Positions 158 through 62,202 of a stretch of 64,000 nt of DNA are shown here, in pieces (position 1 is the stretch's first letter; every line of letters starts with the position of its first letter). Below the pieces are notes generated by a model. That model searched no databases and was not told where the DNA came from. It saw only the letters and a program-made list of their open reading frames with translations. A program made the position numbers and the translations under genes. Location: positions 248,001 through 312,000 of the IMG/VR virus record IMGVR_UViG_3300024239_000013; one strand, written 5' to 3'.

Positions 158-165
158 TATATATC
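158..165 (-). promoter_or_regulatory. late promoter motif GATATATA (representative copy)
   Basis: GATATATA also at 3671, 15694, 17514, 24465, 30086, 33533, 36307, 45096, 49186, 51478, 62195; GATAAATA at 8182, 16874, 58777; all just upstream of minus-strand starts. Confidence 0.75.
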
Positions 166-272
166 CATAATCAAAGAGAGGTCAAAAGAGGGGAAATTAT
201 ATAAATATCTGGATAATATTTCTTTTTTTATTTTCATACTTATCATAATACCATATGACCCCTGTGTATTTT

Positions 273-1049
273 TCAATTCCACTGTAAGAAATAAGATGGA
301 GTATTCTCACCATTGATCATGTCCATTACTTCCTGAAGCTCATTTGCTCCTTGGCTTCCGATTTCACTGGCGTTTATTTGAACTCCTCCCGGAAGATTAT
401 AAGTGAAAACACTCAACATCTGTGATAAGGCAATTTTACATTTGGCTATACAATATCTAACGAAGAGCTCATCATCGTATAAATATTCATCCAATATAGC
501 TACGTGACATCTTACTGATACATCAACTCCGCCTACACTGAATCCTTGAGCCATTTGACCCTTTCCTGATCTATTTGGATCTCTCCCTAATATTGTTAAA
601 AATTTAGTGTTCTTATTATATTTAAAAGCATATGTATTTAAAAGATAGGCTTTAGCCAAGTCGAAATATGAATACATAACTGTTCTATAAACTAAGTTAT
701 CTCCTACAAAAGGTGACAATAAAAGTTCGGAACCTAATAATTTAGAATCACCAAAATCTCTATCTGGGTTTCCTGATATACCATATCCACCAAGTTCTCT
801 AACCTCATAAACACTAATTATCGATTTCGGAAGCTTTATCTGTCTAGTTCTTTTAAATTCTTGATGTTGGAAAAGTTTATTTTCCAGAACAAATATTCTT
901 TCCTCTACCGCATATTGGTAATTATCATAAAACCAAGCCTTTGCCCTGTCTATAATTCTCTCAATCTCTGCGACATTTAGATTGTAAGGTAAAGCACAAC
1001 TAAAAGAAAGTGAATCTTGTATTTCCTGTATTAACTCTTCCTGTGTCAT
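273..1049 (-). CDS. neck protein, T4 gp13-like
   Basis: 258 aa; C-terminal LPGGVQINASEI..QG..EL motif typical of gp13. Confidence 0.65.
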   Translation of the reverse strand: MTQEELIQEIQDSLSFSCALPYNLNVAEIERIIDRAKAWFYDNYQYAVEERIFVLENKLFQHQEFKRTRQIKLPKSIISVYEVRELGGYGISGNPDRDFGDSKLLGSELLLSPFVGDNLVYRTVMYSYFDLAKAYLLNTYAFKYNKNTKFLTILGRDPNRSGKGQMAQGFSVGGVDVSVRCHVAILDEYLYDDELFVRYCIAKCKIALSQMLSVFTYNLPGGVQINASEIGSQGANELQEVMDMINGENTPSYFLQWN

Positions 1050-1065
1050 TTGTTATTAATTTTTT

Positions 1066-2472
1066 TTAGTAATTCATATTACCGAATCTTTGATCTTTGT
1101 ATTTATCATTTAGATCTTTTAATCTTTTATCAGTAACGAATCTTATCATTCTCTGGTCTTCAAGATTTTTAACTTTCATGGTCTCTTTACTAACATCTGC
1201 ATTTTCTCCAATGTTACCAGCTCTAAGAACTCCTCCTTCAATTTTACAGTTTATATTTTTTCCCTGACAGTCTATAAAGCAATCTTTAAGTTCATTCGAA
1301 TAATCAACAATAGTAGATTTAACCTTTGAAGATATAACTTTTGTCCCTGAAAAAATATAGGAATCTTCAACTGAGGATTTCTTAATTTCACAGTTGTATA
1401 TGTTACAATTTCTAATTATTGCATTTTTAATATCACAAAGGATTAAATCTATTCCTTCTATTTCAAAAGAGTTCCTAAATCTGGCTTCCTTTACCTGATA
1501 TCTTCCTGTTGTAGTATCATAATTAAAATAGCAAGATGTAATATTACCCTCTATAATAAGATCGAATATTTTATCTCTTATTGCAGGAAAGTAAGTTTTT
1601 ACATTCTCGTCCCACCCCTTTAGATCTATAAATATATGGAAGTCTGGATAATTTCTAAAGAAAAAATCTGGATTTGAAAAAGATCTTACAACTTTAGAAT
1701 ACTTATTCATCATTTTCTGAAGTTCTGCTAAATCATCTTTACTATATCCAGATATTCTATGACTAAGTATGTCGTATAAATAGAGTATAATATAATCTAT
1801 TATCTCTCTTATTTCTTTTATTTTTTTCTGATAATCTCTGTTACCTAAGTATCTAAATTCAATATAACCTTTAGGAATTTTGGTAAAATTAACTCCATAA
1901 TATTTGTCATCCGGAACTCTATACATTTTAGGATCTATTGTTTGTATATTTTCTAATATAGAAAATCTATTTCTCGGAACTACTTTTTTTATAGATTTTG
2001 CATAGACATTTTTTTCCCTATTCCCGAATCTAGAATAAATAAATCCTTCATCCAATCCTAAGATAAACTTAAGCTTGTCCAAAGTTTCTATTTTATCCTT
2101 TACGTCTCTCCTGTTTTTATCGAAGCTCACAGAAAATTGGAATGCACATCTATCCGTTGTCCATCCATTTTCGTCTATCCAATTTAAAACTTTAATTAAA
2201 ATTGGTATTGCTTCATTATAAGGAAGTGGTCCTGTTATAAACTCCATCATTTTACTTCCACCTGAATAATCGGGTTCGAGTTTAAAGTTATCTGAATCAA
2301 CAGGTACATTAGAGTGATATTTCTCAGAAACCACCACTTTCTTTTTTAAAAGTTTTGCCAATGACTCCGCAGCCTGACCTTTTAAAAGATCTGTATAGAA
2401 TTCAAATTCAAATCCTATTACTGAAGAGCCAAGGGCATTTATTTTATCAAAATGTGTTCTATTATCTGACAT
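1066..2472 (-). CDS. amidoligase-like (COOH-NH2 ligase fold) protein with C-terminal beta-helix-like repeats
   Basis: IGFEFEF, EPDYSGG, MEFITGP, YYGVNF and YIEFRYLG motifs; short I/C/S/N repeats at C-terminus. Confidence 0.6.
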   Translation of the reverse strand: MSDNRTHFDKINALGSSVIGFEFEFYTDLLKGQAAESLAKLLKKKVVVSEKYHSNVPVDSDNFKLEPDYSGGSKMMEFITGPLPYNEAIPILIKVLNWIDENGWTTDRCAFQFSVSFDKNRRDVKDKIETLDKLKFILGLDEGFIYSRFGNREKNVYAKSIKKVVPRNRFSILENIQTIDPKMYRVPDDKYYGVNFTKIPKGYIEFRYLGNRDYQKKIKEIREIIDYIILYLYDILSHRISGYSKDDLAELQKMMNKYSKVVRSFSNPDFFFRNYPDFHIFIDLKGWDENVKTYFPAIRDKIFDLIIEGNITSCYFNYDTTTGRYQVKEARFRNSFEIEGIDLILCDIKNAIIRNCNIYNCEIKKSSVEDSYIFSGTKVISSKVKSTIVDYSNELKDCFIDCQGKNINCKIEGGVLRAGNIGENADVSKETMKVKNLEDQRMIRFVTDKRLKDLNDKYKDQRFGNMNY

Positions 2473-3628
2473 CTATTAGTTCAACATATATTTTTCCTGA
2501 TATAGTGTCTACCTCATAAGGAAGAACTCTCAGGTCATCTCCAGGTTTGATATTAGCAGCTTTTTTCCCGAGTTTATCTTGAGGAACGAGAGCCATTAAA
2601 CCAAATTCAGTAAGCTCTACTAAAGCTCCATTTTTTCTTTTATGTTTAACTTTAGCATCTATAGCTTCACAGGTTCCTTCATTAACTTGTGATTCTAATT
2701 TTTGTATAATTATATTTCTTTCTAGAGGCTTATCTAAGGTTAAAGTTAATCTATTATTATCCTTTATCTCCTTAACATAAAATTCTACTTCAGATCCAGG
2801 AGAAAGAGTTGACAAAGAATCTTCTTCCGAAAATTCCGTTTTATGAATCAATCCGGTATAAACACTGTCCCATTCTACAAAAACTCCAAAATCACTGGTT
2901 CCTGTTACATATCCTTTATATTTTTTAGTAAGATCCAATTCCTGTATTTTGGAATCCATTATCTTATTAAGATATTTTTTATACGAAACGATAAAGATAT
3001 CCTTAGCTTCCACATAACCTTCAATCATAACATGAAGTTCTTTTCCGATGTATGATTCAAAATCTGTTATTTTATTAGCAGCTGCTAGTGATCCAGGTAA
3101 GAAACATTTAATTCCAGATAGTTCAGCAATATATCCTCCCTTATTAACACTGATTATTTTAACTTTATATGCACTGCTTTCCTTCTTAATTTGCTCAAAA
3201 AGTTCAGCTCTTAAAGTATGAATATAATATTCTATAACTGATCCTAAATAGTTACCGTTAGATTTTCTAACTCTAGCTTTAAGTTCAGCTCCAGGATTAA
3301 ACGAAAGATTTATAATATTAAGTCTTTCTGCGTCTCTCTTTTCCTTTTTAATATCTATATAAATAGTCTGACCTGATGCTGTCTGAGCTAATGCTTCATC
3401 CTCTTTCAGTTGTACTATTTTACAAAGATAAACAGATCCATCTACTAGATCTTTAGGTTCGAGTTCATAATCTGAAGAACCATAAGAATCAAAGTATAAT
3501 TCTGCTAATTCCTGAGCATAGGGTTCGTGACAAAAAATCTTATTACCCTTTGCTGATTTAATTTTGTTATTGACTGTTAGCCTGCTAGGTACGTCCCATT
3601 CAAAAGTGTCGAAATGATTCGAATTCAT
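2462..3628 (-). CDS. rpsA: ribosomal protein S1-like protein (about 4 S1 domains)
   Basis: KGGYIAELSGIKCFLPGS and GYVTGTSDFGVFVE..TGLIHKTE match bS1 domains 2 and 3; fourth repeat GALVEL..ALVP. Confidence 0.75.
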   Translation of the reverse strand: MNSNHFDTFEWDVPSRLTVNNKIKSAKGNKIFCHEPYAQELAELYFDSYGSSDYELEPKDLVDGSVYLCKIVQLKEDEALAQTASGQTIYIDIKKEKRDAERLNIINLSFNPGAELKARVRKSNGNYLGSVIEYYIHTLRAELFEQIKKESSAYKVKIISVNKGGYIAELSGIKCFLPGSLAAANKITDFESYIGKELHVMIEGYVEAKDIFIVSYKKYLNKIMDSKIQELDLTKKYKGYVTGTSDFGVFVEWDSVYTGLIHKTEFSEEDSLSTLSPGSEVEFYVKEIKDNNRLTLTLDKPLERNIIIQKLESQVNEGTCEAIDAKVKHKRKNGALVELTEFGLMALVPQDKLGKKAANIKPGDDLRVLPYEVDTISGKIYVELIDVR

Positions 3629-3663: not shown

Positions 3664-3692
3664 ATTATACTATATATCATACATTGAGTTCC
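3664..3692 (-). promoter_or_regulatory. middle-type promoter GGAAC-N18-TATAAT with nested late motif (S1 operon)
   Basis: Exact 18-nt spacer; GATATATA at 3671-3678 lies inside the spacer. Confidence 0.65.
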
Positions 3693-8159: not shown

Positions 8160-8196
8160 CTGAGTTCTATAATATTTACTATATTTATCCTACATT

Positions 8197-13455: not shown

Positions 13456-14071
13456 TATTCTTAGAATTTTTTCCTATAGTTGATTTTTCTAAAACAAGAT
13501 TCTTTTCTGATTCTACTTTTTTATTTACAGAATAATAAGTTTTTTTTATAGAATCTGCCAGAGAAGATTTGATATCTTCAATATCAATACCATCTAAAAC
13601 AAAATTTATAATCTCACTATCTGCATCATCAAAAGAACTAGATAAAACTCCATATAGCTCTTTTGGAGGTAGATTTAACTTTAATTTTATAGAAACCTCT
13701 ACAATGTTTTCTTTTTGTTTTTTTAACAGCTTATATATCGGAGAATCCGTATCAACAAATAACTGAGGATCCTTATAAACTACCTCAGTAACAGATGATG
13801 TTTTTGACTGCGGGATCGCTTTTATAATATCAGATTCTCTGTGATCTATTTGTTTTAATTTTGGTTGGGCTGGAAAATAAGTCATATACTCTTCCAAAAG
13901 TTCTAAATTAATTCTCTTTCCACTTTCAAATTCAACAAAAACGCTCTCGCCGACTTTATTGACTCTTTTGAATGATTCTATCGATAAACTATCGTCTCCT
14001 TTTATCCATTGGAACTCCATATTAGAATACATACTACTAAGTTCTTCGAGATTAACTTTTTTATTTTCCAT
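13448..14071 (-). CDS. hypothetical protein
   Basis: ORF track gives 14122; ATG at 14071 (MENKKV) has the typical A-rich leader. Confidence 0.5.
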   Translation of the reverse strand: MENKKVNLEELSSMYSNMEFQWIKGDDSLSIESFKRVNKVGESVFVEFESGKRINLELLEEYMTYFPAQPKLKQIDHRESDIIKAIPQSKTSSVTEVVYKDPQLFVDTDSPIYKLLKKQKENIVEVSIKLKLNLPPKELYGVLSSSFDDADSEIINFVLDGIDIEDIKSSLADSIKKTYYSVNKKVESEKNLVLEKSTIGKNSKNNE

Positions 14072-15677: not shown

Positions 15678-15759
15678 TTTATTTTTTTTATTCTATATAT
15701 CCAAAGTAATATTTTTAGATTTAAAATATATAGATAGAGCATTTTAAAAAAATTGTATC

Positions 15760-17493: not shown

Positions 17494-17546
17494 TTTTGGA
17501 TTTTATTTTAGTGTATATATCCAATAAAAATAAAAATATTCGAAGA

Positions 17547-24438: not shown

Positions 24439-24502
24439 ATATAGACAATTATATTTTTCTATTCTATATATCCAATAAGATTTTTTATATGTTACCTAAA
24501 CT

Positions 24503-28071: not shown

Positions 28072-30060
28072 TTACCTTTTTGAGAATTTTTGCTCTAGTG
28101 CTGAAGCTATATAATTCATATAATCATTTGAATAAGCTTTTGGAGCATCGTCTTGAGCTAGATTTTCATTCTCGTTTAGTTTTTGAACACCAACTGGTTT
28201 AGTCCCTAGCTGTCTAGTAGACCAGAAGTTTTTGATCTGGTAAGGTGTATCTAATCTATAGAAGTTACTTTGAGCAATGATAGATTGCTGGTGGCCTTCG
28301 TTAAGAGATTCCCAAACCTGAACATATTCTTCAGGCATCTCGTCGATAAACTTAAGTCCTGTTTTGTTAGTGTTCTCGTTAAGAGTTTCTTCTGCCTTCT
28401 GTGTGTCGGCTGGTGCTTCTACAAATCTAGAAGCTTCGTTTATATTTGATTCAGTTTTTTGTGTTTTAACTGATTCTATCAAATTGTCAATTTTTGTTGA
28501 AAGATTATCATAATCTCCAGCAAATCCAGATTCATTTAAACCTGCTTTAGCTGAAAGATCTACGCTTTCTCTTAGTGATTCTTCTTTTTGCATAATTCCG
28601 TTATTAACGCTTTCTGCTATATATTCAGTATAAGATATTGATCTTTTAACTTTTTCTGCTAAATATTCAGAATAATCCAATCCTCTATTAAGATTTTCAG
28701 CTAAATAATCAGAATATTCGATTGATTTGTTTAAGTTTTCTGCTAAGTACTCAGTATATTCAATTCCATCATTTAGTTTTTCTGCTACGTATTCAGTGTA
28801 GGCAATACCTTTATCTAAGTTTTCTGCAATATATTCAGTGTAAGCAATACCTTTATCTACATTTTCTGCAAGATATTCAGCGTAGGCAATACCTTTATCT
28901 ACATTTTCTGCAAGATATTCAGAATATTGGATATTCTGATCAACTTTCTCTGCAAGATACTTAGAATATTCAATGGATTTATCTACATTTTCAGCAACAT
29001 ACTCAGAATAAGAAATGGATTTATCTACATTTTCAGCTAAATACTTAGAATAAGAAATATTCTTATCAAGATTTTCAGCTAAATATTTGCTGTAGCTGAT
29101 ACTAGAATCTAAATTCTCTGCAAGATATTCTCCGTACTTGATAGCATTATCTAAGTTTTCAGCAAGATATTCAGAATATTTTTCTAATTTTTTTACTCTT
29201 TCTTCTAGTGCTGAAGTATTAGAAGATTCATCAGATTCTGTCAATTTTTCTCTTTGGTCTTTAATTTCTGCTATTGAACTTTTCATAGCATCCATCTCTT
29301 TTTTTAAGAAAATCGAATATCGATTAAGTTCTTCTGCAGTAACAAGTTCTTTATTCTCCATGAGGATTGTTTTATTTTTGTCTATTTTTGATACGAGTTT
29401 GTTAAATTCTTCGTTATTTTCAACTTTATATATCTTTACTGAGGATTCATTTTCTAGGCCTAATGATTCATTCACACAAATTAAATCAGATAATACACTA
29501 GAATTTCTCATTTCGAAAAATTCTTCAAATGTATAACCTGCACTTTCATAAACTCTTTCAAGCTGTGCGTCTTGAAATCCAGGATCTGCAACTAGGTCGT
29601 AAGTAAATATCTTTTTAATTTGAACTTTCTTATCGTTACCTACCGCTCCTGCTGCTCTAGATGATATAGATAAAGGAACTCCAGCATCTACTAATTTCTT
29701 AGCAATCTGACCCGCTGGTGTATCTAGAAGTCTTACTTTAATTCTAATTTCTCTAGTATTCTTATCGTAAGTAAGATCCGTAATTATGTGGGATATGTTT
29801 TTTAAAGAAACGTCAAACTTTTCTGGGTGGTCTAATTCTCCAACCAGTCTTTTTTGAGCTATCTTATCTTTAAGATAATTTAAATGTGGAAGATATTCAG
29901 CTTCTTCATATATCCTATTGTTGTTGTTCTCTTTTCCGAAAACAGCAGCAATACCCTCAAGTACATATTCTTCAGAATCTGTTTTTTTAGATTCCAAAAC
30001 CGTTTCCTGTCTTTCTAGAATAAAAACTAAATCTTCGTTCAATTTTTGAGTTGTCGGCAT
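28072..30060 (-). CDS. gp21: prohead protease (gp21-like) fused to scaffold/core domain
   Basis: NNNNRIY, GELDHP, LLDTPAG, ISSRAAG, TYDLVADPGF, then 14 x 14-aa repeats. Confidence 0.88.
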   Translation of the reverse strand: MPTTQKLNEDLVFILERQETVLESKKTDSEEYVLEGIAAVFGKENNNNRIYEEAEYLPHLNYLKDKIAQKRLVGELDHPEKFDVSLKNISHIITDLTYDKNTREIRIKVRLLDTPAGQIAKKLVDAGVPLSISSRAAGAVGNDKKVQIKKIFTYDLVADPGFQDAQLERVYESAGYTFEEFFEMRNSSVLSDLICVNESLGLENESSVKIYKVENNEEFNKLVSKIDKNKTILMENKELVTAEELNRYSIFLKKEMDAMKSSIAEIKDQREKLTESDESSNTSALEERVKKLEKYSEYLAENLDNAIKYGEYLAENLDSSISYSKYLAENLDKNISYSKYLAENVDKSISYSEYVAENVDKSIEYSKYLAEKVDQNIQYSEYLAENVDKGIAYAEYLAENVDKGIAYTEYIAENLDKGIAYTEYVAEKLNDGIEYTEYLAENLNKSIEYSDYLAENLNRGLDYSEYLAEKVKRSISYTEYIAESVNNGIMQKEESLRESVDLSAKAGLNESGFAGDYDNLSTKIDNLIESVKTQKTESNINEASRFVEAPADTQKAEETLNENTNKTGLKFIDEMPEEYVQVWESLNEGHQQSIIAQSNFYRLDTPYQIKNFWSTRQLGTKPVGVQKLNENENLAQDDAPKAYSNDYMNYIASALEQKFSKR
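28610..29180 (-). repeat. 42-bp (14-aa) coding tandem repeat, 14 copies of Y-x-E-Y-L-A-E-N-L-D-K-x-I-x
   Basis: Counted directly in the translation. Confidence 0.92.
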
Positions 30061-30085: not shown

Positions 30086-30093
30086 TATATATC
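30086..30093 (-). promoter_or_regulatory. late promoter of protease-capsid operon
   Basis: GATATATA 25 nt upstream of ATG 30060. Confidence 0.75.
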
Positions 30094-32713: not shown

Positions 32714-33514
32714 CTATTTTTCTGTGTAAATTTTATCGTATGATTTTGAAATAATATTTATCAATTTTTCTATATATCCTTCATTTCTAAGCTTTTTAAA
32801 TGCTAGGTTTCCTATAGACATTTCTCCTCCTTTTTCTAACCCCTCTCTTCTCATTTTAAATATTTTTTTCTTCATCGTAAGACATCTCTTATAAAGTTGT
32901 CTAGCATTTGAAGGTATCATCGAGTCAACAAGAAGTCTTGAATGTAATTGTTCTATGTCAGAAACTATGGAATTATATTTCTTTTCAACATCTCTCTCGT
33001 CTATTGAAGGTGGATTATATGATGGAGATTTTATCCATTCATTTTTTAAAAGAGAAAAGAGAGCAGATGCTGTATGTGGTTCTGATTCGTCCTGTACGTA
33101 AAGTTCAACGTCATAACCTCTAATAACGATATCATGTCTAAGATTCCACATGAATCTAATCCCACCTATGGCTTTTTTTAGTATTTGAGGATTGTCATCA
33201 TCAATACCTTTAAGGTTAACTATAATATGAACGTCAAGATCAGAAAAATCTGTGTAGTTGTAATTTGATAAAGATCCAGTTAATTGTATATCAACAATAT
33301 CCTTTTGTTTTAATACATCTTCATAATTAGAAAAAAATTCATTGGCTATCCTAAGTAGCTTTCTTCTAACTCTCTGGTCAAATACCCATTTATCCTTCTT
33401 CTTAGTCCAAAAAACTGGAGCCAACTCATCATGGTAGAAAGAATTTACCTTTCCTTCATTTAATGAATTGCTTCTTTTATTTAAAAATCTATTAAACTCT
33501 AATAATCTATCCAC
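32714..33514 (-). CDS. Pol-beta superfamily nucleotidyltransferase with CTS-like leader
   Basis: TGSLSNYNYTDFSDLDVHI (GS..DxD) and VELYVQD; GTG start; MDRLLEFNRF..LNEG. Confidence 0.75.
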   Translation of the reverse strand: MDRLLEFNRFLNKRSNSLNEGKVNSFYHDELAPVFWTKKKDKWVFDQRVRRKLLRIANEFFSNYEDVLKQKDIVDIQLTGSLSNYNYTDFSDLDVHIIVNLKGIDDDNPQILKKAIGGIRFMWNLRHDIVIRGYDVELYVQDESEPHTASALFSLLKNEWIKSPSYNPPSIDERDVEKKYNSIVSDIEQLHSRLLVDSMIPSNARQLYKRCLTMKKKIFKMRREGLEKGGEMSIGNLAFKKLRNEGYIEKLINIISKSYDKIYTEK

Positions 33515-33519
33515 AAAAA

Positions 33520-33553
33520 AAAAGCTTTTCTCTATATATCGAGAAAAGCTTTT
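33520..33553 (-). terminator. terminator hairpin whose loop is the late promoter motif
   Basis: AAAAGCTTTTCTC-GATATATA-GAGAAAAGCTTTT then T-run on minus strand. Confidence 0.8.
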
Positions 33554-36301: not shown

Positions 36302-36317
36302 TTTTTTATATATCCTT

Positions 36318-45069: not shown

Positions 45070-45672
45070 TTAAATTAATTTCGATCTATATTCATTATAT
45101 ATCCCCTGTATGGATAACCCCTCTATCATATTAAAACTAAGATAAGGAATTTTTGGCCAATCCTCCATGGAAATAACCTTAACATTTTTTATGAATTTAT
45201 ATTTAAATCCAAAATAGGAATTTAAATATCCAGTACCTTTAAGAATATTCTTTAGCACAGGGTCCTTTAAATTCACTGGAACTTTGGTCGATCCTCTTTC
45301 GTATGAATTCTTATTAGCTAATAATTGTTCATAGAAATTATCATATATTCTTTCTATTATATCAACTCTTATTATATTCGGTACAGTTATTAAATCTATA
45401 CCTTTTATTACAGTTCCAGATTCTAATGTGTTGAAAACATCGGTACAAATAACAAGAGGCATTCGATCTACGAAAGGCCTTTTTTTGCTAATTTCAGAAT
45501 CCGTTAAATACCTAAAAGAGTAAATCTCTCCTGGGATGAATGGAGGAATGAAAGATATATCTGGTGAATCGTTCTTAAAATATTTACTTAAGAACAGATC
45601 ATTAGTTGAAGTGAATATGTTTCCCGAACTAGTTTCATCTTCTTTGTATTTAAGAACTAAATCTTTATACAT
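45070..45672 (-). CDS. DNA end protector gp2-like (tentative)
   Basis: PGEIYSFRY..DRMPLV pattern; adjacent to gp4. Confidence 0.5.
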   Translation of the reverse strand: MYKDLVLKYKEDETSSGNIFTSTNDLFLSKYFKNDSPDISFIPPFIPGEIYSFRYLTDSEISKKRPFVDRMPLVICTDVFNTLESGTVIKGIDLITVPNIIRVDIIERIYDNFYEQLLANKNSYERGSTKVPVNLKDPVLKNILKGTGYLNSYFGFKYKFIKNVKVISMEDWPKIPYLSFNMIEGLSIQGIYNEYRSKLI

Positions 45673-46163: not shown

Positions 46164-46523
46164 TTAAATATTATATGAATTATCATCACCAGTGATATAG
46201 CTAAATGGTATAGTTTTAGGATTTTTAGGGGGATGTAATTTTTTCCATCCCTTAGCAAATCCATTTTTAGCAATCTGTGTAAAATAAGCAAATGGATTAT
46301 TAGACTTTTCAGGATTGAATCGATTCCAATATTTACAGAGATCTTCCATAGCAAAGGCCATACAATCTTCTTTATCTTCTGGATCTTTATATGACATTTT
46401 CTTAGCTATACCGTTTATCATTAAGGTAAACATTTCTATAGTTTCCGGTGTCAGCTTACCGGCTTTCTTTGATTCTATTACAGCAAGCATAAGCTCACTA
46501 TTTTTAACATATTCTTTTGCCAT
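46164..46523 (-). CDS. gp55: late-transcription sigma factor, T4 gp55-like (short)
   Basis: YVKNSEL, FNPEKSNNPFAYFTQIAKN; start reassigned to ATG 46523 because the longer ORF crosses a terminator and promoter. Confidence 0.8.
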   Translation of the reverse strand: MAKEYVKNSELMLAVIESKKAGKLTPETIEMFTLMINGIAKKMSYKDPEDKEDCMAFAMEDLCKYWNRFNPEKSNNPFAYFTQIAKNGFAKGWKKLHPPKNPKTIPFSYITGDDNSYNI

Positions 46524-46549: not shown

Positions 46550-46578
46550 ATTCTAGTATAAAAAATGGTAAATATTTC
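46550..46578 (-). promoter_or_regulatory. middle-type promoter GAAAT-N18-TAGAAT (late sigma gene)
   Basis: Between terminator and ATG 46523. Confidence 0.65.
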
Positions 46579-46580
46579 AT

Positions 46581-46617
46581 AAAAAAAGAATGTAGCTTTT
46601 TGGTTACATTCTTTTTT
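46581..46617 (-). terminator. intrinsic terminator
   Basis: aaaaaagaatgta ... tacattctttttt inverted repeat. Confidence 0.75.
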
Positions 46618-49163: not shown

Positions 49164-49247
49164 TTTTTACTTTTTTTTTACTGTTTATATATCCAACTAA
49201 GGACAAGAAACTTTTACTATATATTTTACGATATAATCTTTTTTTTC

Positions 49248-51457: not shown

Positions 51458-51502
51458 AATATTAATTTTTATTTTTTTATATATCCAAAAACAAACTCCA
51501 CA

Positions 51503-53432: not shown

Positions 53433-53461
53433 TTTATATCATCGTAAATCTTTATTGTTTC
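53433..53461 (-). promoter_or_regulatory. middle-type promoter GAAAC-N18-TATAAA
   Basis: -35 lies in the last codons of the ECF sigma gene. Confidence 0.6.
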
Positions 53462-54060
53462 TCGTCTATTTTTTTTCTGATTTTACTGCGAGCTCTTCTG
53501 ATCCTTGTAGCGATGGATCTTTTCTTTATCCCATATTTTTCTGCAATGTCCTTATATTTCATATTGTTTATCTCTCGGTCGATCATAATGTCTCTGTATA
53601 ACTCTGGGAGATCTCTAATCTCATCCAGAACGGATTCATAAAACTCATCAAAAGTAGATTCCTCCTTATAGAATGCATACAAAGGATCCTCTTCTAAAAC
53701 ATACTGTCCTCCTATCTCATTGGATTCGTTTTTTGAAGAAAGATATTCGAGTTCAGCATCAGTGTGATTGTGATATCTTTTTCTGGACTTCATTAAGAGG
53801 AGAGATTCATTTCTTGCTATATTATAACACCAAGTTGAAAAATTTCCTCTTTCATTGTTATACTGGTCTATTTTTATCCAAATTTTAGACATGGTATTAA
53901 TGAAAGCATCTTCAGCAAGTTCCTGTTCTTTTACAATCAAAAAACAATGGTTTAGTATACCAGGTCGGAGTCTCTCGAATAAAATTTTAAAATTCTTATC
54001 ATTTTTCACAGTTATGAAATCCTCAGCTATCTTTTGGATATTCTTTTCTTTTTGTTGCAT
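53452..54060 (-). CDS. ECF-type (sigma-70 group 4) sigma factor
   Basis: Region 2 AED...FSTWCYNIARN; region 4 LPELYR..MKYKDIAE..SIATRIRRAR. Confidence 0.85.
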   Translation of the reverse strand: MQQKEKNIQKIAEDFITVKNDKNFKILFERLRPGILNHCFLIVKEQELAEDAFINTMSKIWIKIDQYNNERGNFSTWCYNIARNESLLLMKSRKRYHNHTDAELEYLSSKNESNEIGGQYVLEEDPLYAFYKEESTFDEFYESVLDEIRDLPELYRDIMIDREINNMKYKDIAEKYGIKKRSIATRIRRARSKIRKKIDEKQ

Positions 54061-56255: not shown

Positions 56256-56271
56256 ATTGTATATATTTATT

Positions 56272-57529: not shown

Positions 57530-57562
57530 AATTTTTTATTTATTCATTATATAACCAAAAAC

Positions 57563-57619: not shown

Positions 57620-58195
57620 TTACAAGAAAAGGTCTTCCCAATAATCACAAACCCAACTAGTTGTTATTGTATAGATAGTTGCTTGTTCATAGTCTAGTTC
57701 CATGGGATTTATAGCTTCACTCAAGAAACATGAGGGTATTCTTATTCTCCTAAAAACATCCCCTCTTTTATTAAAGATTGATATTGAGATAGATCCTACA
57801 TAGTCTGCTTTTATCCCCATTGCACCTGTAAGAGGATTATAAATTAAATCTGACCATTGTCTAAGTATTTTATAAACGCTCATCGAATTAGCATCATTTA
57901 AGTTAACCTCAAATTCCATGGTCAATGTCATATCACTTTGAGAAGGTTCTCCCCCTGCATATCTTCTTGTTGCAAACTTATAGTTTTGGTTAATAGTCTG
58001 TGCAGGAGCAATATCAACAGCTAACCCTGTTATAGATTTAACTTGTTGTGCTAATATTCCCTCCCCATTAAATGCCGTTGTTGCATCTAAAATACCAGCA
58101 GGAGGATTTATAATAACTTCAAACTGGTTCAAAAATACCGGTTCATAGTTATTTATTGCTGCTTTAGAATTCGTAAAATGTGGTAATCCTGCCAT
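57620..58195 (-). CDS. gp19: tail tube protein gp19-like, copy 2
   Basis: Directly after sheath and tube 1; LRQWSDLIYNPLTG, DYWEDLFL. Confidence 0.8.
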   Translation of the reverse strand: MAGLPHFTNSKAAINNYEPVFLNQFEVIINPPAGILDATTAFNGEGILAQQVKSITGLAVDIAPAQTINQNYKFATRRYAGGEPSQSDMTLTMEFEVNLNDANSMSVYKILRQWSDLIYNPLTGAMGIKADYVGSISISIFNKRGDVFRRIRIPSCFLSEAINPMELDYEQATIYTITTSWVCDYWEDLFL

Positions 58196-58212: not shown

Positions 58213-58767
58213 TTATAGGAATAAATCTTCCCAATAATCAACCGCCCAAGTCATATCGTCAATTTTATATAAATCGGTAGAGGTATAATTTAAATTCATA
58301 GGAGATATTGGTTTAGTAGGAAAGCAATCCTTACATGTTATTCTTCTAAAAACGTCTCCTTGTTTATTAAAAATCGATATAACTATAGTTCCCGTATAGT
58401 CGCTTTTAATGCCCATTGCACCAGTCAATGGATTATAAATCAAATCTGACCATTGTCTTAATGTTTTGAAAACATACATAGAGTTAGCATCATTAAGGTT
58501 TACAGTAAAACTTAAACTAACGTCCATAAATGTATTTTCGGGTTTAGCTCCAGCATAATTTCTTTTAGCAAATTTATACTTTTGGCTAGTTACTCCGGGA
58601 TTCTTATCTAAAGAAAGTCCGCTAACCTTAGTAACATGTTGGAGTAATATTTCACCACCAGCTACAGCAGCAGGAGGTATTATTGTTACCTCGAACTGGT
58701 TCAGATAAACAGGTTCAAATTTGTTTATAGCTGAAAGTGAATTTTGAAAATGTGATAGTCCTGCCAT
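58213..58767 (-). CDS. gp19: tail tube protein gp19-like, copy 1
   Basis: Follows sheath; same motifs as copy 2. Confidence 0.8.
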   Translation of the reverse strand: MAGLSHFQNSLSAINKFEPVYLNQFEVTIIPPAAVAGGEILLQHVTKVSGLSLDKNPGVTSQKYKFAKRNYAGAKPENTFMDVSLSFTVNLNDANSMYVFKTLRQWSDLIYNPLTGAMGIKSDYTGTIVISIFNKQGDVFRRITCKDCFPTKPISPMNLNYTSTDLYKIDDMTWAVDYWEDLFL

Positions 58768-58811
58768 AGTTAGTTATATTTATCTTTACTTATGAAAATC
58801 ATCAAATTACA

Positions 58812-61800
58812 TTATACAAATTGTATAAATCCTCCTGATGATATTCCTCCTGTTTTACTAACAGTAAGTCTGTTGATGAATTTTTGAATTCCTTTTGCAG
58901 GTTCAACAATAACATCAATTATACCCATATTCATATCTATGATTGAAGGGGTGTTATTAGAAGCATCCATAATAGTCTGATATGCATAAATACCTCCTCC
59001 TGCTCTAACTCCATCAAGATAATTATCAACTAAAGTTTTTATCTCAAGTCTGATTGTGTCTTCATTGAAATCAAAAAGATAATTAGCTAGAATTTCTTGT
59101 ACGTCAGTTTCGATACTAATTAAAAGATCTCTAACATGTATAAGATTAAAAGCAGAGTTAACTTGTTGATAAGCAGTTTGGTTACCATAGATGGCTACAC
59201 CAACCCCTCTTCTTTTTATAATTGGATTGATACCAAAAGGCTCTAAATTACCTCTATCTTCTTCATCGAAATCATATTCAACCCCTACTATATTAGATCC
59301 GCTTATTAAACCTCTTTTTTGACCAGCAATGATAGCATAAGGTTCTCCGTTAGAAAATTTTCTAAGGAAATTGTTAGAAACAAATGCTGCAGGAGGAACG
59401 TTTATATTTCTATTTCCCTCTCTTACTGTTATGTATGGAGCATAGAAACCACAGAATTTAGCTCCATCTTCTTCGCTAGGTAAGCTGAAAGTGTAGGTTG
59501 GATTTAATGATAAATTACCTCCTTCCGTAATATAAGCTGTATTTAGCTTAGGATATGGGTTTACAGAAGTAGGAGCATCGGTAAATCTAGGGTCTGTACT
59601 AGCTCTAAATTGTTCCATAGAAGGAGCATTTATAATAGCAAGTGCTTGTTGTCTTAGTTTAGCAAGTCTACTTAATTGATATTTAGAATTAGGTAGAATT
59701 TGACCAGAGAATGTGTCTACAATATATCTAAATGATATAACGTCTTTAGAGGATAAAGTTTTAGCTATGTTTGTGTTGTACATAACATCTAAAATCTCTG
59801 ATATTCTCGCGTCTGTTCCGTTAGGTCTATGCCAATCATTCATACTAAATCCTGAAAGATATGAGAAATCAAAAGATCTAGTAAATTGAGCAATAGATGC
59901 AAATTTTTGAACTCTGACCCCATTAGCAGTAGAATAGTATAATACAGGTCTTGAAGAAACTACTTTATAAATACCTGCTGTACTAGTTCTTGAAACTGAT
60001 GTAATTTTAGCTAATCTATTTTGTCTGTTTCCATTAACATTTTCACAAACATCCAAGTCTGTAGATACTACCAAGTCACCTACAGAAAATGGAACATTAC
60101 CGTTCAAATCTAATCCAATAGTGAACGTATTAACATCTATTCTTGTACAATCAATAAATTGATTAATGGAACCATTTTTAGAAACGATATCAAATTTCTG
60201 AGTGTCTACTGGATATCCAATATTATCTGAAGCATATGTCGTGCCAAAAGAAGGAACGTCTGTTATCGTAGCATCATCTAGATCTACATTGCTATAAGCC
60301 CTAGTATAAACTAGATTAAATTGGTCTCTATCTACTGTAGATTCAAACCCCAAATATCTAACTTGCGTTCCTGCAGAGTTAATCCAAGCAAGATCCCCTG
60401 TAGTAATTTCCGAATATTTATGATCCTGATAAAGTTGGGATGCATTATAAGCTAAGATTGCATTAGAAATACCCAAAGGTGCTCCAGGCCCAGTTATTCC
60501 ATTAGGTGTAAATATACTTTCTATATTAACATAATCCGAATTACCAAATTGATAAGCTTTAGCGTAGAACGGTTGGCTACTTCCCGATGCTCCTGTATTA
60601 TAAGAATTTAAATTATAAGTAGGGGTAACGGTTATACCCTGAGATCTATAGAAAGGAGTATCTAAAGGATGTGTGAAATAAATTCTAAGTGCTCCAGAAA
60701 CCTCCTTAGTTCCAGTAACTTTAAGTTTAACTATACTTGCTTCAGAGAATTGATTTATTAATGCACCTGTTAATCCCCCAGTGTATCCTGAAACTACTCC
60801 TAGTATAAATTTCTGATCGTTTGAAGAGGTAACACTTAAGAAACTTTTAAGTTCAGCAACATCTGTATTATTTTGGATGTAACCTGCGGTAACACCATAA
60901 GTAGTTTTAGTTTGCAAATAATGTAAACCACTATCATAAGCAGAAGGATCATAGATTTCAAAAGAATCAGAAACGATCCCTGCAGTAGCTCCTTCGGAAC
61001 CGGTTAAAGTAAATAAAGTACCAACTTTAGTTCCTGTAGTAAATACAGTTGCTCCAGTTGGACTAGTAAATCCAGTAGCACCAGTTACACCAACTACTTT
61101 TTGAGAGTATAAGTAATCTGCAACTAAAACCTGGTCATAACTTAAGAAATTGATCTTTGGTGTTTTAAGGTCTCTGTCTCCTGTTAATTCATCAATTAAG
61201 TGGTTACCAACTAAATCTATTCTAGATGTATTTTGACAAATGCTATCAAATGCTTGTTCATCAATAGCACAGAATAACCCAGTTGACGGAGTATTATTAT
61301 TAACTAGTGTTTGTATATACTGATTAACTCCATTTAAATCAACGAAATCTGGAATTATACATCCAGTAACATTCGTAACAATAGAAACATCAGGATCGTT
61401 TAGAAATTGATCAATTCTATCTTTTATAAATCCATTATTGGTAAAATATTTACTCCATTTCGGATCTATTGAAAGTGCTTGATAATTTGTCCAGTTACCA
61501 TAAACTGCTATAACATCAATAAAATAATCAGATATGTAATCATAAGGGTGCATGAAACTAGGAACATTATCAGCACCATACCAATCTATTGCGAAAATAT
61601 CATAACCTTTAAGCGGCTTATTAGAATCTGTAGATTTTCTAACTATTACGCTCATAGGTGATTTACCGAGATTCGTTAAATTAAACAATTTACCTTGGTC
61701 TTCTACGCTTAGTGTTGCAAGGAAATAATTTGGATCTGCAAACCAGAATCTCTCCTTATTATAATAAGAAGAATAAAGTCTGCTTGTTACAACACCATTA

Positions 61801-62165
61801 TTTTCTTCAGTGTCAATTGAATATGATTGATATGTTGCTTTATCTGGGTTAGATGATTCTTCGTCGTCATTTAATCTTAATAGATTTAACGCAAAGACTG
61901 GTCCAGTATTTAGACATGTTAATATTGACCTTTGAAAGAAAGATCCTTTATTTTCTAGTGATCTATCGACGTCACCGAAAATAGATATAAGAGTTGTTAC
62001 GTCTGGAATATAGACTGGTGTATTGAACGGTCCCTTATTAGAGAATCCTACAACTAATCTGATAGTCTGAGATGTTAATATTACATTTTGAGTTGTCTCA
62101 AATTCCAATGTATAAACTCCAGATGCTCTAAATTGAGAGTAGTCTATTTTTACCTTATTTGCCAT
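58812..62165 (-). CDS. gp18: contractile tail sheath protein gp18-like
   Basis: GVYTLE, GPFNTP, VPPAAFV, INPI, GNQT, VRDLL, FDFN, NNTP. Confidence 0.9.
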   Translation of the reverse strand: MANKVKIDYSQFRASGVYTLEFETTQNVILTSQTIRLVVGFSNKGPFNTPVYIPDVTTLISIFGDVDRSLENKGSFFQRSILTCLNTGPVFALNLLRLNDDEESSNPDKATYQSYSIDTEENNGVVTSRLYSSYYNKERFWFADPNYFLATLSVEDQGKLFNLTNLGKSPMSVIVRKSTDSNKPLKGYDIFAIDWYGADNVPSFMHPYDYISDYFIDVIAVYGNWTNYQALSIDPKWSKYFTNNGFIKDRIDQFLNDPDVSIVTNVTGCIIPDFVDLNGVNQYIQTLVNNNTPSTGLFCAIDEQAFDSICQNTSRIDLVGNHLIDELTGDRDLKTPKINFLSYDQVLVADYLYSQKVVGVTGATGFTSPTGATVFTTGTKVGTLFTLTGSEGATAGIVSDSFEIYDPSAYDSGLHYLQTKTTYGVTAGYIQNNTDVAELKSFLSVTSSNDQKFILGVVSGYTGGLTGALINQFSEASIVKLKVTGTKEVSGALRIYFTHPLDTPFYRSQGITVTPTYNLNSYNTGASGSSQPFYAKAYQFGNSDYVNIESIFTPNGITGPGAPLGISNAILAYNASQLYQDHKYSEITTGDLAWINSAGTQVRYLGFESTVDRDQFNLVYTRAYSNVDLDDATITDVPSFGTTYASDNIGYPVDTQKFDIVSKNGSINQFIDCTRIDVNTFTIGLDLNGNVPFSVGDLVVSTDLDVCENVNGNRQNRLAKITSVSRTSTAGIYKVVSSRPVLYYSTANGVRVQKFASIAQFTRSFDFSYLSGFSMNDWHRPNGTDARISEILDVMYNTNIAKTLSSKDVISFRYIVDTFSGQILPNSKYQLSRLAKLRQQALAIINAPSMEQFRASTDPRFTDAPTSVNPYPKLNTAYITEGGNLSLNPTYTFSLPSEEDGAKFCGFYAPYITVREGNRNINVPPAAFVSNNFLRKFSNGEPYAIIAGQKRGLISGSNIVGVEYDFDEEDRGNLEPFGINPIIKRRGVGVAIYGNQTAYQQVNSAFNLIHVRDLLISIETDVQEILANYLFDFNEDTIRLEIKTLVDNYLDGVRAGGGIYAYQTIMDASNNTPSIIDMNMGIIDVIVEPAKGIQKFINRLTVSKTGGISSGGFIQFV

Positions 62166-62194
62166 TATTTTTCAAGATATTTTTGCTTCATGTC

Positions 62195-62202
62195 TATATA
62201 TC
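62195..62202 (-). promoter_or_regulatory. late promoter of sheath gene
   Basis: GATATATA 29 nt upstream of ATG 62165. Confidence 0.75.

What the first reader, a model, noticed from the sequence alone, without database searches (positions are those of the whole stretch)
158..62202. Late promoter GATATATA/GATAAATA, a shifted version of T4 TATAAATA
15 copies lie 5-60 nt upstream of starts, mostly of virion genes (gp25, protease/MCP, portal, sheath, tube, head proteins). One-mismatch variants occur at 15725 (+), 56264 and 57548. The motif predicts late expression for hypothetical ORFs and corrects a start (51457). The cognate gp55-like sigma is only about 119 aa. At 36307 only 5 nt separate motif and ATG.
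Basis: partly seen in the sequence, partly recalled or inferred. Interest (0 to 1): 0.6.

Follow-up and report, generated by a model that had tools for sequence, protein, structure and literature searches.

The report
Jumbo-phage late promoter GATATATA
An 8-base signal, GATATATA, lies just upstream of the virion and lysis genes of a 319-kb phage that probably infects Bacteroidota. It is most likely the late-gene promoter read by a miniature (119 aa) T4-gp55-type sigma factor, a new sequence variant of a well-known system.

Summary
The total count of GATAWATA is not above chance, but its placement is. In the whole 319-kb genome, 37 of 55 GATATATA copies lie on the sense strand within 40 nt upstream of a start; about 1.9 are expected and 4 are antisense.

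In hundreds of related IMG/VR contigs the 8-mer stays fixed upstream of the same genes while the flanks diverge. Seventeen of the window's 24 exact copies are conserved. Six copies are not conserved and look like chance: four of the six GATAAATA copies and two coding GATATATA copies.

The motif has no -35 partner. It never co-occurs with a second, Bacteroidota-type early promoter class. It precedes virion, endolysin and homing-endonuclease genes.

The gp55 homologue is confirmed. It is 119 aa in 80 of 80 relatives, and it is a sigma-region-2 domain without T4's helix-loop-helix motif.

Related huge phages use nATATATA or ATAAATA, so the motif is a substitution variant of T4 TATAAATA (positions -13 and -9), not a shifted one.

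Caveats: no start-site or timing data exist. The phage encodes two further sigma factors. No gp33 or gp45 homologue was found.

Verdict: a new variant of a known kind.

The parts
158..165 (-). GATATATA, 19 nt upstream of the gp25-like baseplate gene (start at 138)
   Evidence: Kept in 20/20 distinct relatives. Weak phrog_261 match.
3671..3678 (-). GATATATA, 42 nt upstream of ORF 2462-3628
   Evidence: Kept in 11/11 relatives.
8182..8189 (-). GATAAATA variant, 22 nt upstream of ORF 5859-8159
   Evidence: Kept in 20/22 relatives.
13732..13739 (-). GATATATA inside ORF 13448-14122; candidate internal promoter
   Evidence: Kept in 15/19 relatives although the flanking protein sequence diverges.
15694..15701 (-). 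GATATATA, 16 nt upstream of ORF 15228-15677
   Evidence: Kept in 16/16 relatives.
15725..15732 (+). AATATATA variant, 27 nt upstream of the only + strand gene in the window (15760-16482); divergent from the site at 15694
   Evidence: Kept in 14/15 relatives.
17514..17521 (-). GATATATA, 20 nt upstream of ORF 16873-17493
   Evidence: Kept in 14/14 relatives.
24465..24472 (-). GATATATA, 26 nt upstream of ORF 23290-24438
   Evidence: Kept in 8/8 relatives, where it sits just behind a terminator hairpin.
29427..29434 (-). GATATATA inside the protease-scaffold gene, 65 nt upstream of the in-frame ATG at 29361 (M234; nested 429-aa scaffold ORF)
   Evidence: Kept in 11/11 relatives at synonymous sites while neighbouring codons vary.
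30086..30093 (-). GATATATA, 25 nt upstream of the protease-scaffold gene (28072-30060). The MCP gene (26330-28042) follows without a motif of its own and ends at the terminator 26277-26307.
   Evidence: Kept in 11/11 relatives; no motif before the MCP gene in 9/9. phrog_207 and phrog_138 matches.
32771..32778 (-). GATATATA, 59 nt upstream of ORF 30129-32711, within the 3' end of the preceding gene
   Evidence: Kept in 11/11 relatives; the neighbouring GATAAATA at 32755 is kept in only 3/11.
33515..33553 (-). Intrinsic-terminator hairpin (13-bp stem, run of nine U) whose 8-nt loop is GATATATA (33533-33540), 18 nt upstream of the GTG start of ORF 32714-33514
   Evidence: Folds at -18.4 kcal/mol, z = -7.6. 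Hairpin and loop motif kept in 10/10 relatives, with compensatory stem changes.
36307..36314 (-). GATATATA, only 5 nt upstream of the ATG of ORF 35753-36301 (leaderless geometry)
   Evidence: Motif present in 6/9 relatives, always 4-5 nt from the ATG.
45096..45103 (-). GATATATA, 59 nt upstream of portal gene 43447-45036, within the 3' end of the gp2-like gene
   Evidence: Kept in 45/46 relatives. phrog_213 match.
46164..46523 (-). gp55-type late sigma gene, 119 aa (a sigma region 2 domain plus a 23-aa tail)
   Evidence: phrog_234, E = 3e-14. PDB 7D7C gp55, E = 9e-4. Pfam Sigma70_r2. 119 aa in 80/80 relatives, 82-93% identical. AF2 model with 4 helices; best PDB fold match 7d7c_F.
46551..46612 (-). 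Terminator hairpin (46581-46612), then a conserved GAAAT-N17-ACTAGAA element (46551-46578) upstream of gp55; a candidate middle promoter, not of the GATATATA class
   Evidence: The hairpin lies inside the spurious 162-aa ORF extension.
49186..49193 (-). GATATATA, 22 nt upstream of ORF 46776-49163
   Evidence: Kept in 20/20 relatives.
51478..51485 (-). GATATATA, 20 nt upstream of the corrected start at 51457 (100-aa ORF); the terminator 51502-51528 lies just upstream
   Evidence: Kept in 14/15 relatives. In-frame stops in relatives break the longer ORF.
56260..56271 (-). AATATATA (56260-56267), overlapping AATAAATA (56264-56271), 4 nt upstream of ORF 54738-56255
   Evidence: AATATATA is kept in 19/20 relatives, at variable spacing.
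57548..57555 (-). GTTATATA variant, 18 nt upstream of ORF 56444-57529, just behind the terminator 57563-57588
   Evidence: Kept in 26/26 relatives.
58777..58784 (-). GATAAATA variant, 9 nt upstream of tail tube gene 58213-58767
   Evidence: Present upstream of the tube gene in relatives (40 distinct sequences); its paralogue 57620-58195 has no motif. phrog_45 match.
62195..62202 (-). GATATATA, 29 nt upstream of tail sheath gene 58812-62165
   Evidence: Invariant in about 50 distinct relatives whose sheath is 66-87% identical, while the flanks diverge.
53452..54060 (-). ECF-like sigma gene (202 aa; regions 2 and 4), downstream of an early-type promoter at 54690-54721; a rival reader of the motif or a middle-stage sigma

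Best explanation
GATATATA is the -10-like element of this phage's late promoters. GATAAATA, AATATATA and GTTATATA are rarer, site-specific forms of it. The host RNA polymerase core, carrying the phage's 119-aa gp55-type sigma (a sigma region 2 domain only), recognises the 8-mer without any -35 element and starts about 6 nt downstream. This gives 10-25 nt A-rich leaders for most late genes and leaderless mRNAs where the ATG lies 4-6 nt behind the motif.

Shown: the motif's position, strand bias, conservation, gene classes and exclusivity with the early promoter class; and the identity, size and fold of the gp55 homologue.

Inferred: The probable order of events is as follows. Host sigma-A reads the early TTTTTTTATC-N13-TAnATTTG class. 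That class expresses an ECF-like sigma and a sigma-70-like sigma. gp55 is then made from its own GAAAT-N17-ACTAGAA promoter. gp55 finally turns on the GATATATA genes.
For: Placement: 37 of 55 genomic copies are sense-strand and within 40 nt upstream of starts, against 1.85 expected.

No conserved positions upstream of the 8-mer; A enrichment at the 5th and 6th nt downstream.

Spacing peaks at 15-29 nt, with a second class at 4-6 nt. The spacing of the d=5 site is conserved.

Phylogenetic footprints at 17 exact and 3 variant window sites. Synonymous drift destroys the non-functional coding copy at 36497.

Sites sit directly behind intrinsic terminators.

Downstream genes are virion, lysis and homing-endonuclease genes. 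Replication genes carry other promoters, and no gene has both classes.

gp55 homologue. The T4 base-pocket residues N13, Y97 and T99 are conserved (with PMC7892883).

Related huge phages with gp55 homologues use nATATATA (LR756500, LR756504) or ATAAATA (Lak-A1) at the same distances.

No phage RNA polymerase was detected.
Against: There is no transcription start or time-course data. The RNA runs are assembled contigs only, and two of the four cross the MCP-operon promoter.

The genome encodes two other sigma factors.

The gp55 homologue lacks the helix-loop-helix motif, whose truncation cripples T4 gp55 (PMC7892883).

No gp33 or sliding clamp was detected.

T4 gp55 flips A(-9) into a pocket, and this motif has T there. 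No gp55 residue was found that co-varies with that change: T4's H95 is F here, but it is also F in cyanophages that use ATAAATA.

Chryseobacterium phage MA9V-2, which has a 135-aa homologue, showed no clear motif in 40 kb.
Confidence: 0.7

Rival explanations
1. The motif is a promoter element, but it is read by one of the two other phage sigma factors: the ECF-like 202-aa protein (window 53452-54060) or the 305-aa sigma-70-like protein (genome 6573-7490). gp55 would then do something else or read only a subset.
For: Both genes exist and have intact regions 2 and 4. Both sit behind early-type promoters, so they are made before late genes. The mini-gp55 lacks the HLH motif needed in T4.
Against: Two-domain sigmas normally need a -35 element, and none is conserved here. 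A separate bipartite GAAAT-N17-ACTAGAA element exists that would suit an ECF-type sigma. The early class has its own upstream box. The motif is 6/8 (GATATATA) or 7/8 (GATAAATA) identical to the gp55 target in T4. gp55 is more conserved (82-93%) than the sheath (66-87%), in step with the invariance of the motif.
Confidence: 0.15
2. The motif acts at the RNA level, as an endonuclease processing site or a translation signal in the 5' leader, not as a promoter.
For: It is sense-strand specific and always lies within the region just upstream of start codons. At 33533 it forms the loop of a conserved RNA hairpin.
Against: Many copies lie directly behind strong terminators, where little read-through RNA exists. 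The spacing to ATG varies from 4 to 65 nt, which is too loose for a ribosome signal. A palindromic GATATATATC serves divergent genes at 22 nt on each side. The likeness to the gp55 target and the presence of gp55 are left unexplained.
Confidence: 0.05
3. It is a host sigma-A promoter of the extended -10 kind (TGnTATAAT-like), used throughout infection.
For: G-A-TATATA resembles G-n-TATAAT at five of the positions. A T or G often precedes it.
Against: The host is very likely a Bacteroidota member, whose sigma-A reads TAnnTTTG. That class is present separately and never occurs together with this motif. The critical -7 T of a TATAAT box is an A here. The gene classes downstream are late ones.
Confidence: 0.05
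4. It is a chance product of AT-rich intergenic DNA.
For: The total count in the window is not above shuffles. Six window copies are unconserved.
Against: There is a 20-fold excess over a model trained on the upstream regions themselves, a strand bias of 37:4, and invariance across relatives at diverged flanks (and others).
Confidence: 0.01

Closest known systems
T4 late promoters (TATAAATA) read by gp55 with gp33 and the gp45 sliding clamp (PMC2988020; PMC7892883)
   Same: An 8-bp A/T element in the -10 position with no -35 element, lying upstream of virion and lysis genes and homing endonucleases. A phage sigma-region-2 protein with conserved base-pocket residues (T4 N13, Y97, T99). Variation at the first position is tolerated; T4 itself has A(-13) at nine sites.
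   Different: The consensus is G at -13 and T at -9. The sigma is 119 aa against 185 aa and lacks the helix-loop-helix motif. It has a different conserved tail (IPFSYITGDDNSYN[IV]) in place of T4's SLDFLYE clamp-binding motif. No gp33 or gp45 homologue was found. The host is Bacteroidota-like. Two further phage sigmas are present.
Late-promoter variants in other T4-related phages: cyanophage S-PM2 consensus highly similar to T4's, and Aeh1 with a/gC at -13/-12 (in silico; cited in PMC2988020)
   Same: They show that the first two positions of the element drift between lineages while the ATA..ATA core stays.
   Different: None of them changes the -9 A. Cyanophage gp55 proteins are 156-188 aa in the two examples aligned.
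Rak2-like jumbo phages CBB and GAP32: ATAAATA upstream of structural genes plus a gp55-like sigma, with no gp33 or gp45 detected (PMC5259590)
   Same: A jumbo myovirus with a gp55-like sigma, an in-silico late motif of the T4 type, no detectable co-activator or clamp, and several promoter classes.
   Different: Enterobacterial hosts, an ATAAATA core, and an unrelated lineage.
Huge phages of Bacteroidota: Prevotella Lak phages, LR756500/LR756504, Chryseobacterium phages MA9V-1 and MA9V-2, and 'moraphages' (PMC12619734)
   Same: They hold the closest gp55 homologues (34-47% identity, 119-135 aa, same short architecture). LR756500 and LR756504 use nATATATA at the same spacings, including 1-5 nt.
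   Different: Lak-A1 uses ATAAATA. The G at the first position is specific to this phage's clade. No promoter analysis of these phages turned up in the library search.

Membership tests
T4-type (gp55-dependent) late promoter | A single 8-bp A/T-rich -10-like element matching TATAAATA | tested here: met
   GATATATA matches at 6 of 8 positions and GATAAATA at 7 of 8. It has the same length and the same distance class to start codons.
T4-type (gp55-dependent) late promoter | No conserved -35 element | tested here: met
   Information content is 0.6 bit or less at all 20 positions upstream of 38 aligned sites.
T4-type (gp55-dependent) late promoter | Precedes late genes (virion, lysis, homing endonucleases) and not early or replication genes | tested here: met
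   Of 442 genes, none carries both this motif and the early-class promoter.
T4-type (gp55-dependent) late promoter | Transcription starts about 6 nt downstream of the element, late in infection | not testable with these tools
   Only assembled contigs of RNA runs were on hand. Indirect support: ATG 4-6 nt behind the motif at five genomic sites, and A enrichment at +5/+6.
T4-type (gp55-dependent) late promoter | The phage encodes a gp55-family sigma | tested here: met
   phrog_234, E = 3e-14; PDB 7D7C gp55; Sigma70_r2; fold match to 7d7c_F with probability 1.0.
T4-type (gp55-dependent) late promoter | Activation through gp33 and the gp45 sliding clamp | tested here: inconclusive
   No match to the gp45 Pfam models, to T4 or P-HM1 gp45, to beta-clamp or PCNA models, or to T4 gp33. 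A gp44-type clamp loader is present, so a divergent clamp may exist.
gp55 protein family | A sigma-region-2-like four-helix domain with the base-pocket residues (T4 N13, H95, Y97, T99) | tested here: met
   The AF2 model has helices 8-21, 26-41, 48-68 and 77-96. N, Y and T are conserved. H95 is F, as in the cyanophage homologues.
gp55 protein family | An extended H4 plus H5 helix-loop-helix motif and a C-terminal SLDFL-type clamp-binding motif | tested here: not met
   The protein ends 23 residues after the region-2 domain, with a PP break after H4. The tail is conserved but unlike T4's.

The most novel reading that the evidence does not exclude
A 119-aa protein made of nothing but a sigma region 2 domain and a short conserved tail is a complete promoter-specificity factor for Bacteroidota RNA polymerase. 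It reads an 8-mer with T at the position where T4 gp55 flips out an A, and it works without the helix-loop-helix motif, gp33 or a gp45-type clamp. It is the last step of a three-sigma cascade in a widespread clade of environmental jumbo phages. That would make it the smallest known working sigma and would uncouple T4-type late transcription from the replication clamp.
Probability: 0.3. Interest if true: 0.65.

Novelty: new variant of a known kind. Interest (0 to 1): 0.5.

Why it matters
It gives a sequence rule that sorts the genes of a large, uncultured clade of 250-430-kb phages of Bacteroidota into temporal classes. The clade is abundant in wastewater, river and subsurface metagenomes. The rule assigns late expression to dozens of hypothetical ORFs. 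It corrects gene starts. It exposes nested genes, such as a scaffold ORF inside the protease gene, and compact designs, such as a promoter in the loop of a terminator. It also offers a natural minimal gp55 and a natural -9 A-to-T promoter change as test cases for how region-2-only sigmas read DNA and whether clamp coupling is universal in T4-type late transcription.

Tried and rejected
(1) RNA evidence. Runs holding the region are kept only as contigs. Two wastewater metatranscriptomes cover 26341-28590 and 29130-29929 and stop short of the promoter at 30086 and of the terminator at 26277-26307. Two other runs cross the promoter. No start, strand or level can be read from this.

(2) Co-variation of a gp55 residue with the -9 base. 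T4's H95 is F here, but it is also F in P-HM1 and Melnitz gp55, whose phage group (T4-like cyanophages) is reported to use ATAAATA-type elements. I rejected this as a specificity determinant.

(3) A shared clamp-binding tail between gp55 and the split DNA polymerase. The C-termini are unlike each other.

(4) Search for a sliding clamp (gp45 Pfam models, T4 and P-HM1 gp45, a two-sequence profile, beta-clamp and PCNA models) and for gp33. Nothing was found. This is not evidence of absence.

No Rpb1, Rpb2 or T7-type match was found. The T7-type model rang in no control genome, so that search is weak.

(6) Chryseobacterium phage MA9V-2. No enriched ATATATA or ATAAATA class in 40 kb around its gp55.

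(7) GATAAATA as an equal partner of GATATATA. Rejected: 4 of the 6 window copies are unconserved.

(8) Literature. No paper pairs GATATATA with a phage late promoter. The one hit is an unrelated TFIID study.

Full report
WHERE THE WINDOW LIES. The window is positions 248001-312000 of a 319,334-bp IMG/VR virus record. GC content is 31% and CheckV completeness is 100%. Of 442 called ORFs, 385 are on the - strand. The window holds T4-like morphogenesis genes:
- tail sheath, 58812-62165
- tail tube, 58213-58767
- two tandem portal paralogues, 41775-43442 and 43447-45036
- a protease-scaffold fusion, 28072-30060
- major capsid protein (MCP), 26330-28042
- large terminase, 62248 onwards
- gp4-like and gp2-like genes
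It also holds a gp44-type clamp loader, a DNA ligase and nucleotide-metabolism genes. Start codons are preceded by A-rich leaders without Shine-Dalgarno sequences.

THE OBSERVATION. GATAWATA occurs 24 times in the window, 23 times on the - strand. The total is no higher than in shuffles (24 against 19.95 +/- 4.55), so raw frequency is not the signal. Position is the signal.
- An unbiased scan for 8-mers enriched within 70 nt upstream of starts ranks GATAAATA and GATATATA first and third, with the overlapping ATATATAG second.
- In the whole genome, 37 of 55 GATATATA copies lie on the sense strand within 40 nt upstream of a same-strand start. Those positions make up 2.8% of the two strands (binomial p = 2e-44). 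Only 4 copies are antisense there.
- A first-order Markov model trained on the upstream regions themselves gives 1.85 +/- 1.38 copies, with a maximum of 8 in 1000 simulations. AT-richness of intergenic DNA therefore does not explain the excess.
- The distance to the ATG peaks at 15-29 nt (30 of 44 copies within 100 nt). A separate group lies at 4-6 nt.
- GATAAATA is a minor form: only 4 of its 26 genomic copies are upstream of starts.
- No position in the 20 nt upstream of the 8-mer carries more than 0.6 bit. The 5th and 6th nt downstream are A in 28 of 38 sites.

CONSERVATION, SITE BY SITE. Five scans of IMG/VR fetched hundreds of related contigs from environmental metagenomes. The queries were the sheath, ORF 30129-32711, ORF 8197-9750, portal A and gp55. 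Sheath identity to these relatives is 66-87%. Upstream of the sheath gene the 8-mer is invariant in about 50 distinct sequences, including ones whose flanks cannot be aligned.

Across 46 relatives' loci of 12 kb or more, GATATATA is again the most enriched upstream 8-mer, with 115 of 173 copies upstream of starts. These loci are related, so they are not independent.

Window copies kept in relatives (distinct upstream sequences with the motif / all):
- 158 (20/20)
- 3671 (11/11)
- 8182, GATAAATA (20/22)
- 15694 (16/16)
- 17514 (14/14)
- 24465 (8/8)
- 30086 (11/11)
- 32771 (11/11)
- 33533 (10/10)
- 36307 (6/9, always 4-5 nt from the ATG)
- 45096 (45/46)
- 49186 (20/20)
- 51478 (14/15)
- 58777, GATAAATA (all 40 tube orthologues)
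- 62195

- AATATATA at 15725-15732 (+) (14/15)
- AATATATA at 56260-56267 (19/20)
- GTTATATA at 57548-57555 (26/26)

Negative controls behave as chance copies should.
- At 36497 the encoded W-I-Y-T is conserved, but synonymous changes destroy the 8-mer in 11/11 relatives.
- Site 40094 is kept in 0/12, site 16874 in 0/15, site 1100 in 5/21 and site 32755 in 3/11.
- Genes without a motif (MCP, portal B, ORF 49248-49742, ORF 8197-9750) have none in relatives either.

Two coding copies are, unexpectedly, conserved.
- Site 29427 lies inside the protease-scaffold gene (11/11). Its Ile and Tyr codons are fixed while neighbouring codons drift. It lies 65 nt upstream of the in-frame ATG at 29361, which opens a nested 429-aa scaffold ORF just past the protease domain.
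- Site 13732 lies inside ORF 13448-14122 (15/19).

In sum, 17 of the 24 exact copies and all 3 variants look functional. Six copies look like chance. The + strand copy at 18764 was not tested.

WHAT THE MOTIF PRECEDES. In the window it precedes these genes:
- the gp25-like gene
- the protease-scaffold-MCP operon, which ends at a strong terminator at 26277-26307
- portal A
- the sheath and tube genes
- several conserved hypothetical genes in the morphogenesis block

Elsewhere in the genome, the motif-bearing genes with a recognisable function are three endolysin- or transglycosylase-like proteins, an amidase and two homing endonucleases. These are the classes that T4 also expresses late (my own knowledge for T4's lysozyme and I-TevI).

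Replication genes carry other signals. A second, sharply defined promoter class, TTATTTTTTTATC-N~13-TAnATTT(G/A)C, is dense at 11-36 kb. It also precedes the ligase, an exonuclease and the dCMP-deaminase/ECF-sigma operon in the window. Its downstream box fits the Bacteroidota sigma-A -7 consensus TAnnTTTG (my own knowledge). No gene has both classes.

Several GATATATA sites sit directly behind intrinsic terminators: 51478, 57548, and 24465 in relatives. A new transcript must therefore begin there.

THE SIGMA. ORF 46164-46652 (162 aa from its first ATG) matches phrog_234, 'late sigma transcription factor' (E = 3e-14), T4 gp55 of PDB 7D7C (E = 9e-4) and Pfam Sigma70_r2. The similarity begins at the internal ATG at 46523. 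A terminator hairpin (46581-46612) lies inside the longer ORF. All 80 relatives have a 119-aa protein, 74 of them with no upstream in-frame ATG.

The AF2 model (pLDDT 81) has four helices (8-21, 26-41, 48-68, 77-96) and a disordered tail. Its best PDB match is gp55 chain 7d7c_F (probability 1.0, TM 0.70), followed by region 2 of many sigmas.

In T4, A(-12), A(-9) and A(-8) are flipped into pockets formed by Y97, by N13 with H95, and by T99 (PMC7892883). Here N, Y and T are conserved and H95 is F.

T4's extended H4 plus H5 helix-loop-helix motif and its C-terminal SLDFL clamp-binding motif have no counterpart. Truncating the helix-loop-helix motif impairs open-complex formation in T4. Here the chain breaks at PP after H4 and ends in a tail, IPFS[YH]ITG[DE]DN.YN[IV], that is nearly invariant in the clade. 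A ...D/G..Y[NS]I end recurs in LR756500 and LR756504.

gp55 is 82-93% identical among relatives. That is tighter than the sheath, and it fits an invariant target.

RELATIVES AND CO-VARIATION. The nearest gp55 homologues in GenBank phages are:
- uncultured huge phage LR756500 (47%)
- Prevotella Lak megaphages (46%)
- LR745206, LR756502 and LR756504 (34-39%)
- Chryseobacterium phages MA9V-1 and MA9V-2 (34%; 135 aa in MA9V-2)
- only then cyanophages (about 35% over a shorter stretch)
All named hosts in the top group are Bacteroidota. Together with the early-promoter box and the missing Shine-Dalgarno sequences, this makes a Bacteroidota host very likely. A 2025 paper describes a freshwater 'moraphage' lineage of this kind and does not analyse promoters (PMC12619734).

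In 40-kb stretches around gp55:
- LR756504 has 12 of 22 ATATATA copies upstream of starts, mostly AATATATA, at 17-30 nt or 1-5 nt.
- LR756500 has g/a/t-ATATATA at 15-26 nt.
- Lak-A1 has n-ATAAATA at 18-33 nt.
- MA9V-2 shows no clear class.

The element is therefore a family trait whose core is ATATATA or ATAAATA and whose first base is lineage-specific. The motif here differs from T4's TATAAATA by substitutions at -13 and -9 in the same register. It is not shifted. I found no gp55 residue that tracks the -9 base, because F at T4 position 95 is also found in the two cyanophage-type homologues.

MECHANISM AND ITS WEAK POINTS. The best reading is a T4-type late promoter. Host core polymerase plus the mini-gp55 binds the 8-mer as a -10-like element and starts about 6 nt downstream.

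The distances argue against an activator box at -30 or -35. With the ATG only 4-6 nt behind the motif at five sites, a start 20-30 nt further on would fall inside the gene. If the start is the 5th-7th nt after the motif, as in T4 (element at -13 to -6), these five genes get leaderless mRNAs.

The site at 33533 shows an elegant use of this geometry. The 8-mer is exactly the loop of a 13-bp terminator hairpin (-18.4 kcal/mol, z = -7.6; stem covariation). The hairpin ends an early-type gene. A transcript starting 6 nt behind the loop lacks the 5' arm, so it cannot form the terminator.

Four weak points remain.
- No start-site or timing data exist.
- The genome encodes two more sigmas: a 305-aa protein with regions 1.2 to 4, and a 202-aa ECF-like protein at 53452-54060. 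Both sit behind early-type promoters. I assign the motif to gp55 for three reasons. A promoter without a -35 element fits a region-2-only protein. The motif resembles gp55's known target. The other two sigmas have plausible targets of their own. One such target is the conserved GAAAT-N17-ACTAGAA element in front of gp55 itself in 44 distinct relatives. Similar elements lie in front of the clamp loader and three other genes.
- No gp33, gp45, beta-clamp or PCNA homologue was found, although a clamp loader exists. Clamp coupling is therefore open.
- No phage RNA polymerase was detected.

COMPARISON WITH WHAT IS KNOWN, AND NOVELTY. gp55-dependent late promoters and their drift are known. T4 has A(-13) variants. 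Aeh1 has a/gC at -13/-12. S-PM2's consensus is described as highly similar to T4's. Rak2-like jumbo phages have ATAAATA with a gp55-like sigma and no gp33 or gp45 (PMC2988020, PMC5259590). GATATATA as a phage late promoter did not turn up in the library.

The finding is therefore a new variant of a known kind. Its less ordinary aspects are the A-to-T change at a base that T4 gp55 flips into a pocket, the minimal 119-aa sigma without the helix-loop-helix motif, and its place in a probable three-sigma cascade in Bacteroidota phages. Interest is 0.5.

Noticed in passing
window 54690-54721, 34292-34322, 40722-40770; densest at genome 11-36 kb: A second, very regular promoter class, TTATTTTTTTATC-N~13-TAnATTT(G/A)C. 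Its downstream box fits the Bacteroidota sigma-A -7 consensus. It precedes small early genes, the ligase, an exonuclease, the dCMP-deaminase/ECF-sigma operon and the 305-aa sigma gene. It never occurs together with GATATATA.
   Followed up: partly
window 53452-54060 (-); genome 6573-7490 (+): Two further phage sigma genes. One is an ECF-like 202-aa protein (regions 2 and 4). The other is a 305-aa sigma-70-type protein (regions 1.2, 2, 3, 4).
   Followed up: partly
window 46551-46578; similar elements at 39362-39389 and 52131-52158: A bipartite element, GAAA(T/C)-N16-17-ACTA(G/A)AA. It is conserved upstream of gp55 in 44 distinct relatives' sequences and is also found before the clamp loader and a few other genes. 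It may be a middle promoter for one of the other sigmas.
   Followed up: partly
window 33515-33553 (-): A terminator hairpin whose loop is exactly the promoter 8-mer. It is conserved with compensatory stem changes in 10/10 relatives. Late transcripts would start inside the 3' arm and so escape termination.
   Followed up: yes
window 28072-30060 (-): A protease-scaffold fusion gene with a long YSEYLAENLD-type repeat region. It holds a conserved internal GATATATA at 29427 and an in-frame ATG at 29361, which suggests a nested scaffold gene like lambda C/Nu3.
   Followed up: partly
window 41775-43442 and 43447-45036 (-): Two tandem portal-protein paralogues (555 and 529 aa, both phrog_213). Both are conserved in relatives. 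Only the upstream one has a promoter.
   Followed up: partly
window 24503-26239 (-): A 578-aa homing endonuclease (phrog_3339) sits just behind the MCP terminator. It has a match in only one of the related loci searched, so it is a mobile insertion.
   Followed up: partly
genome 191231-192637 and 173120-174268 (-); possibly also 214663-215511: The family-B DNA polymerase is split into separate genes about 17 kb apart. In Chryseobacterium phage MA9V-2 it is also split, with a TnpB gene between the parts.
   Followed up: no
genome 131460-131469: A palindromic GATATATATC gives one motif on each strand. Each lies 22 nt from the ATG of a divergent gene, an apparent bidirectional late promoter.
   Followed up: no
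genome about 92-102 kb: A repeated element, AAAACTTCCCACT..., lies upstream of several small ORFs. It is either another promoter class or a structured RNA.
   Followed up: no
genome about 9.3-9.6 kb: Tandem copies of a 14-mer (CATCTATAAAGAAC) lie in a GC-richer intergenic region between divergent small ORFs. They look like iterons and may mark an origin.
   Followed up: no
runs X5, X9, X10, X14: Small sequencing runs of 2014 labelled with single organisms hold about 55% of the 31-mers of window 24400-34000. A cultured close relative, or a culture carrying one, may therefore exist. DNA holders also include subsurface, wastewater and river metagenomes.
   Followed up: no
L109 (Prevotella phage Lak-A1, 214129-254416): Coding density rises from 0.66 to 0.85 when TAG is not read as a stop. 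Under the standard code the gp55 ORF stops at a TAG after 19 codons. This fits the stop-codon recoding reported for Lak phages.
   Followed up: no
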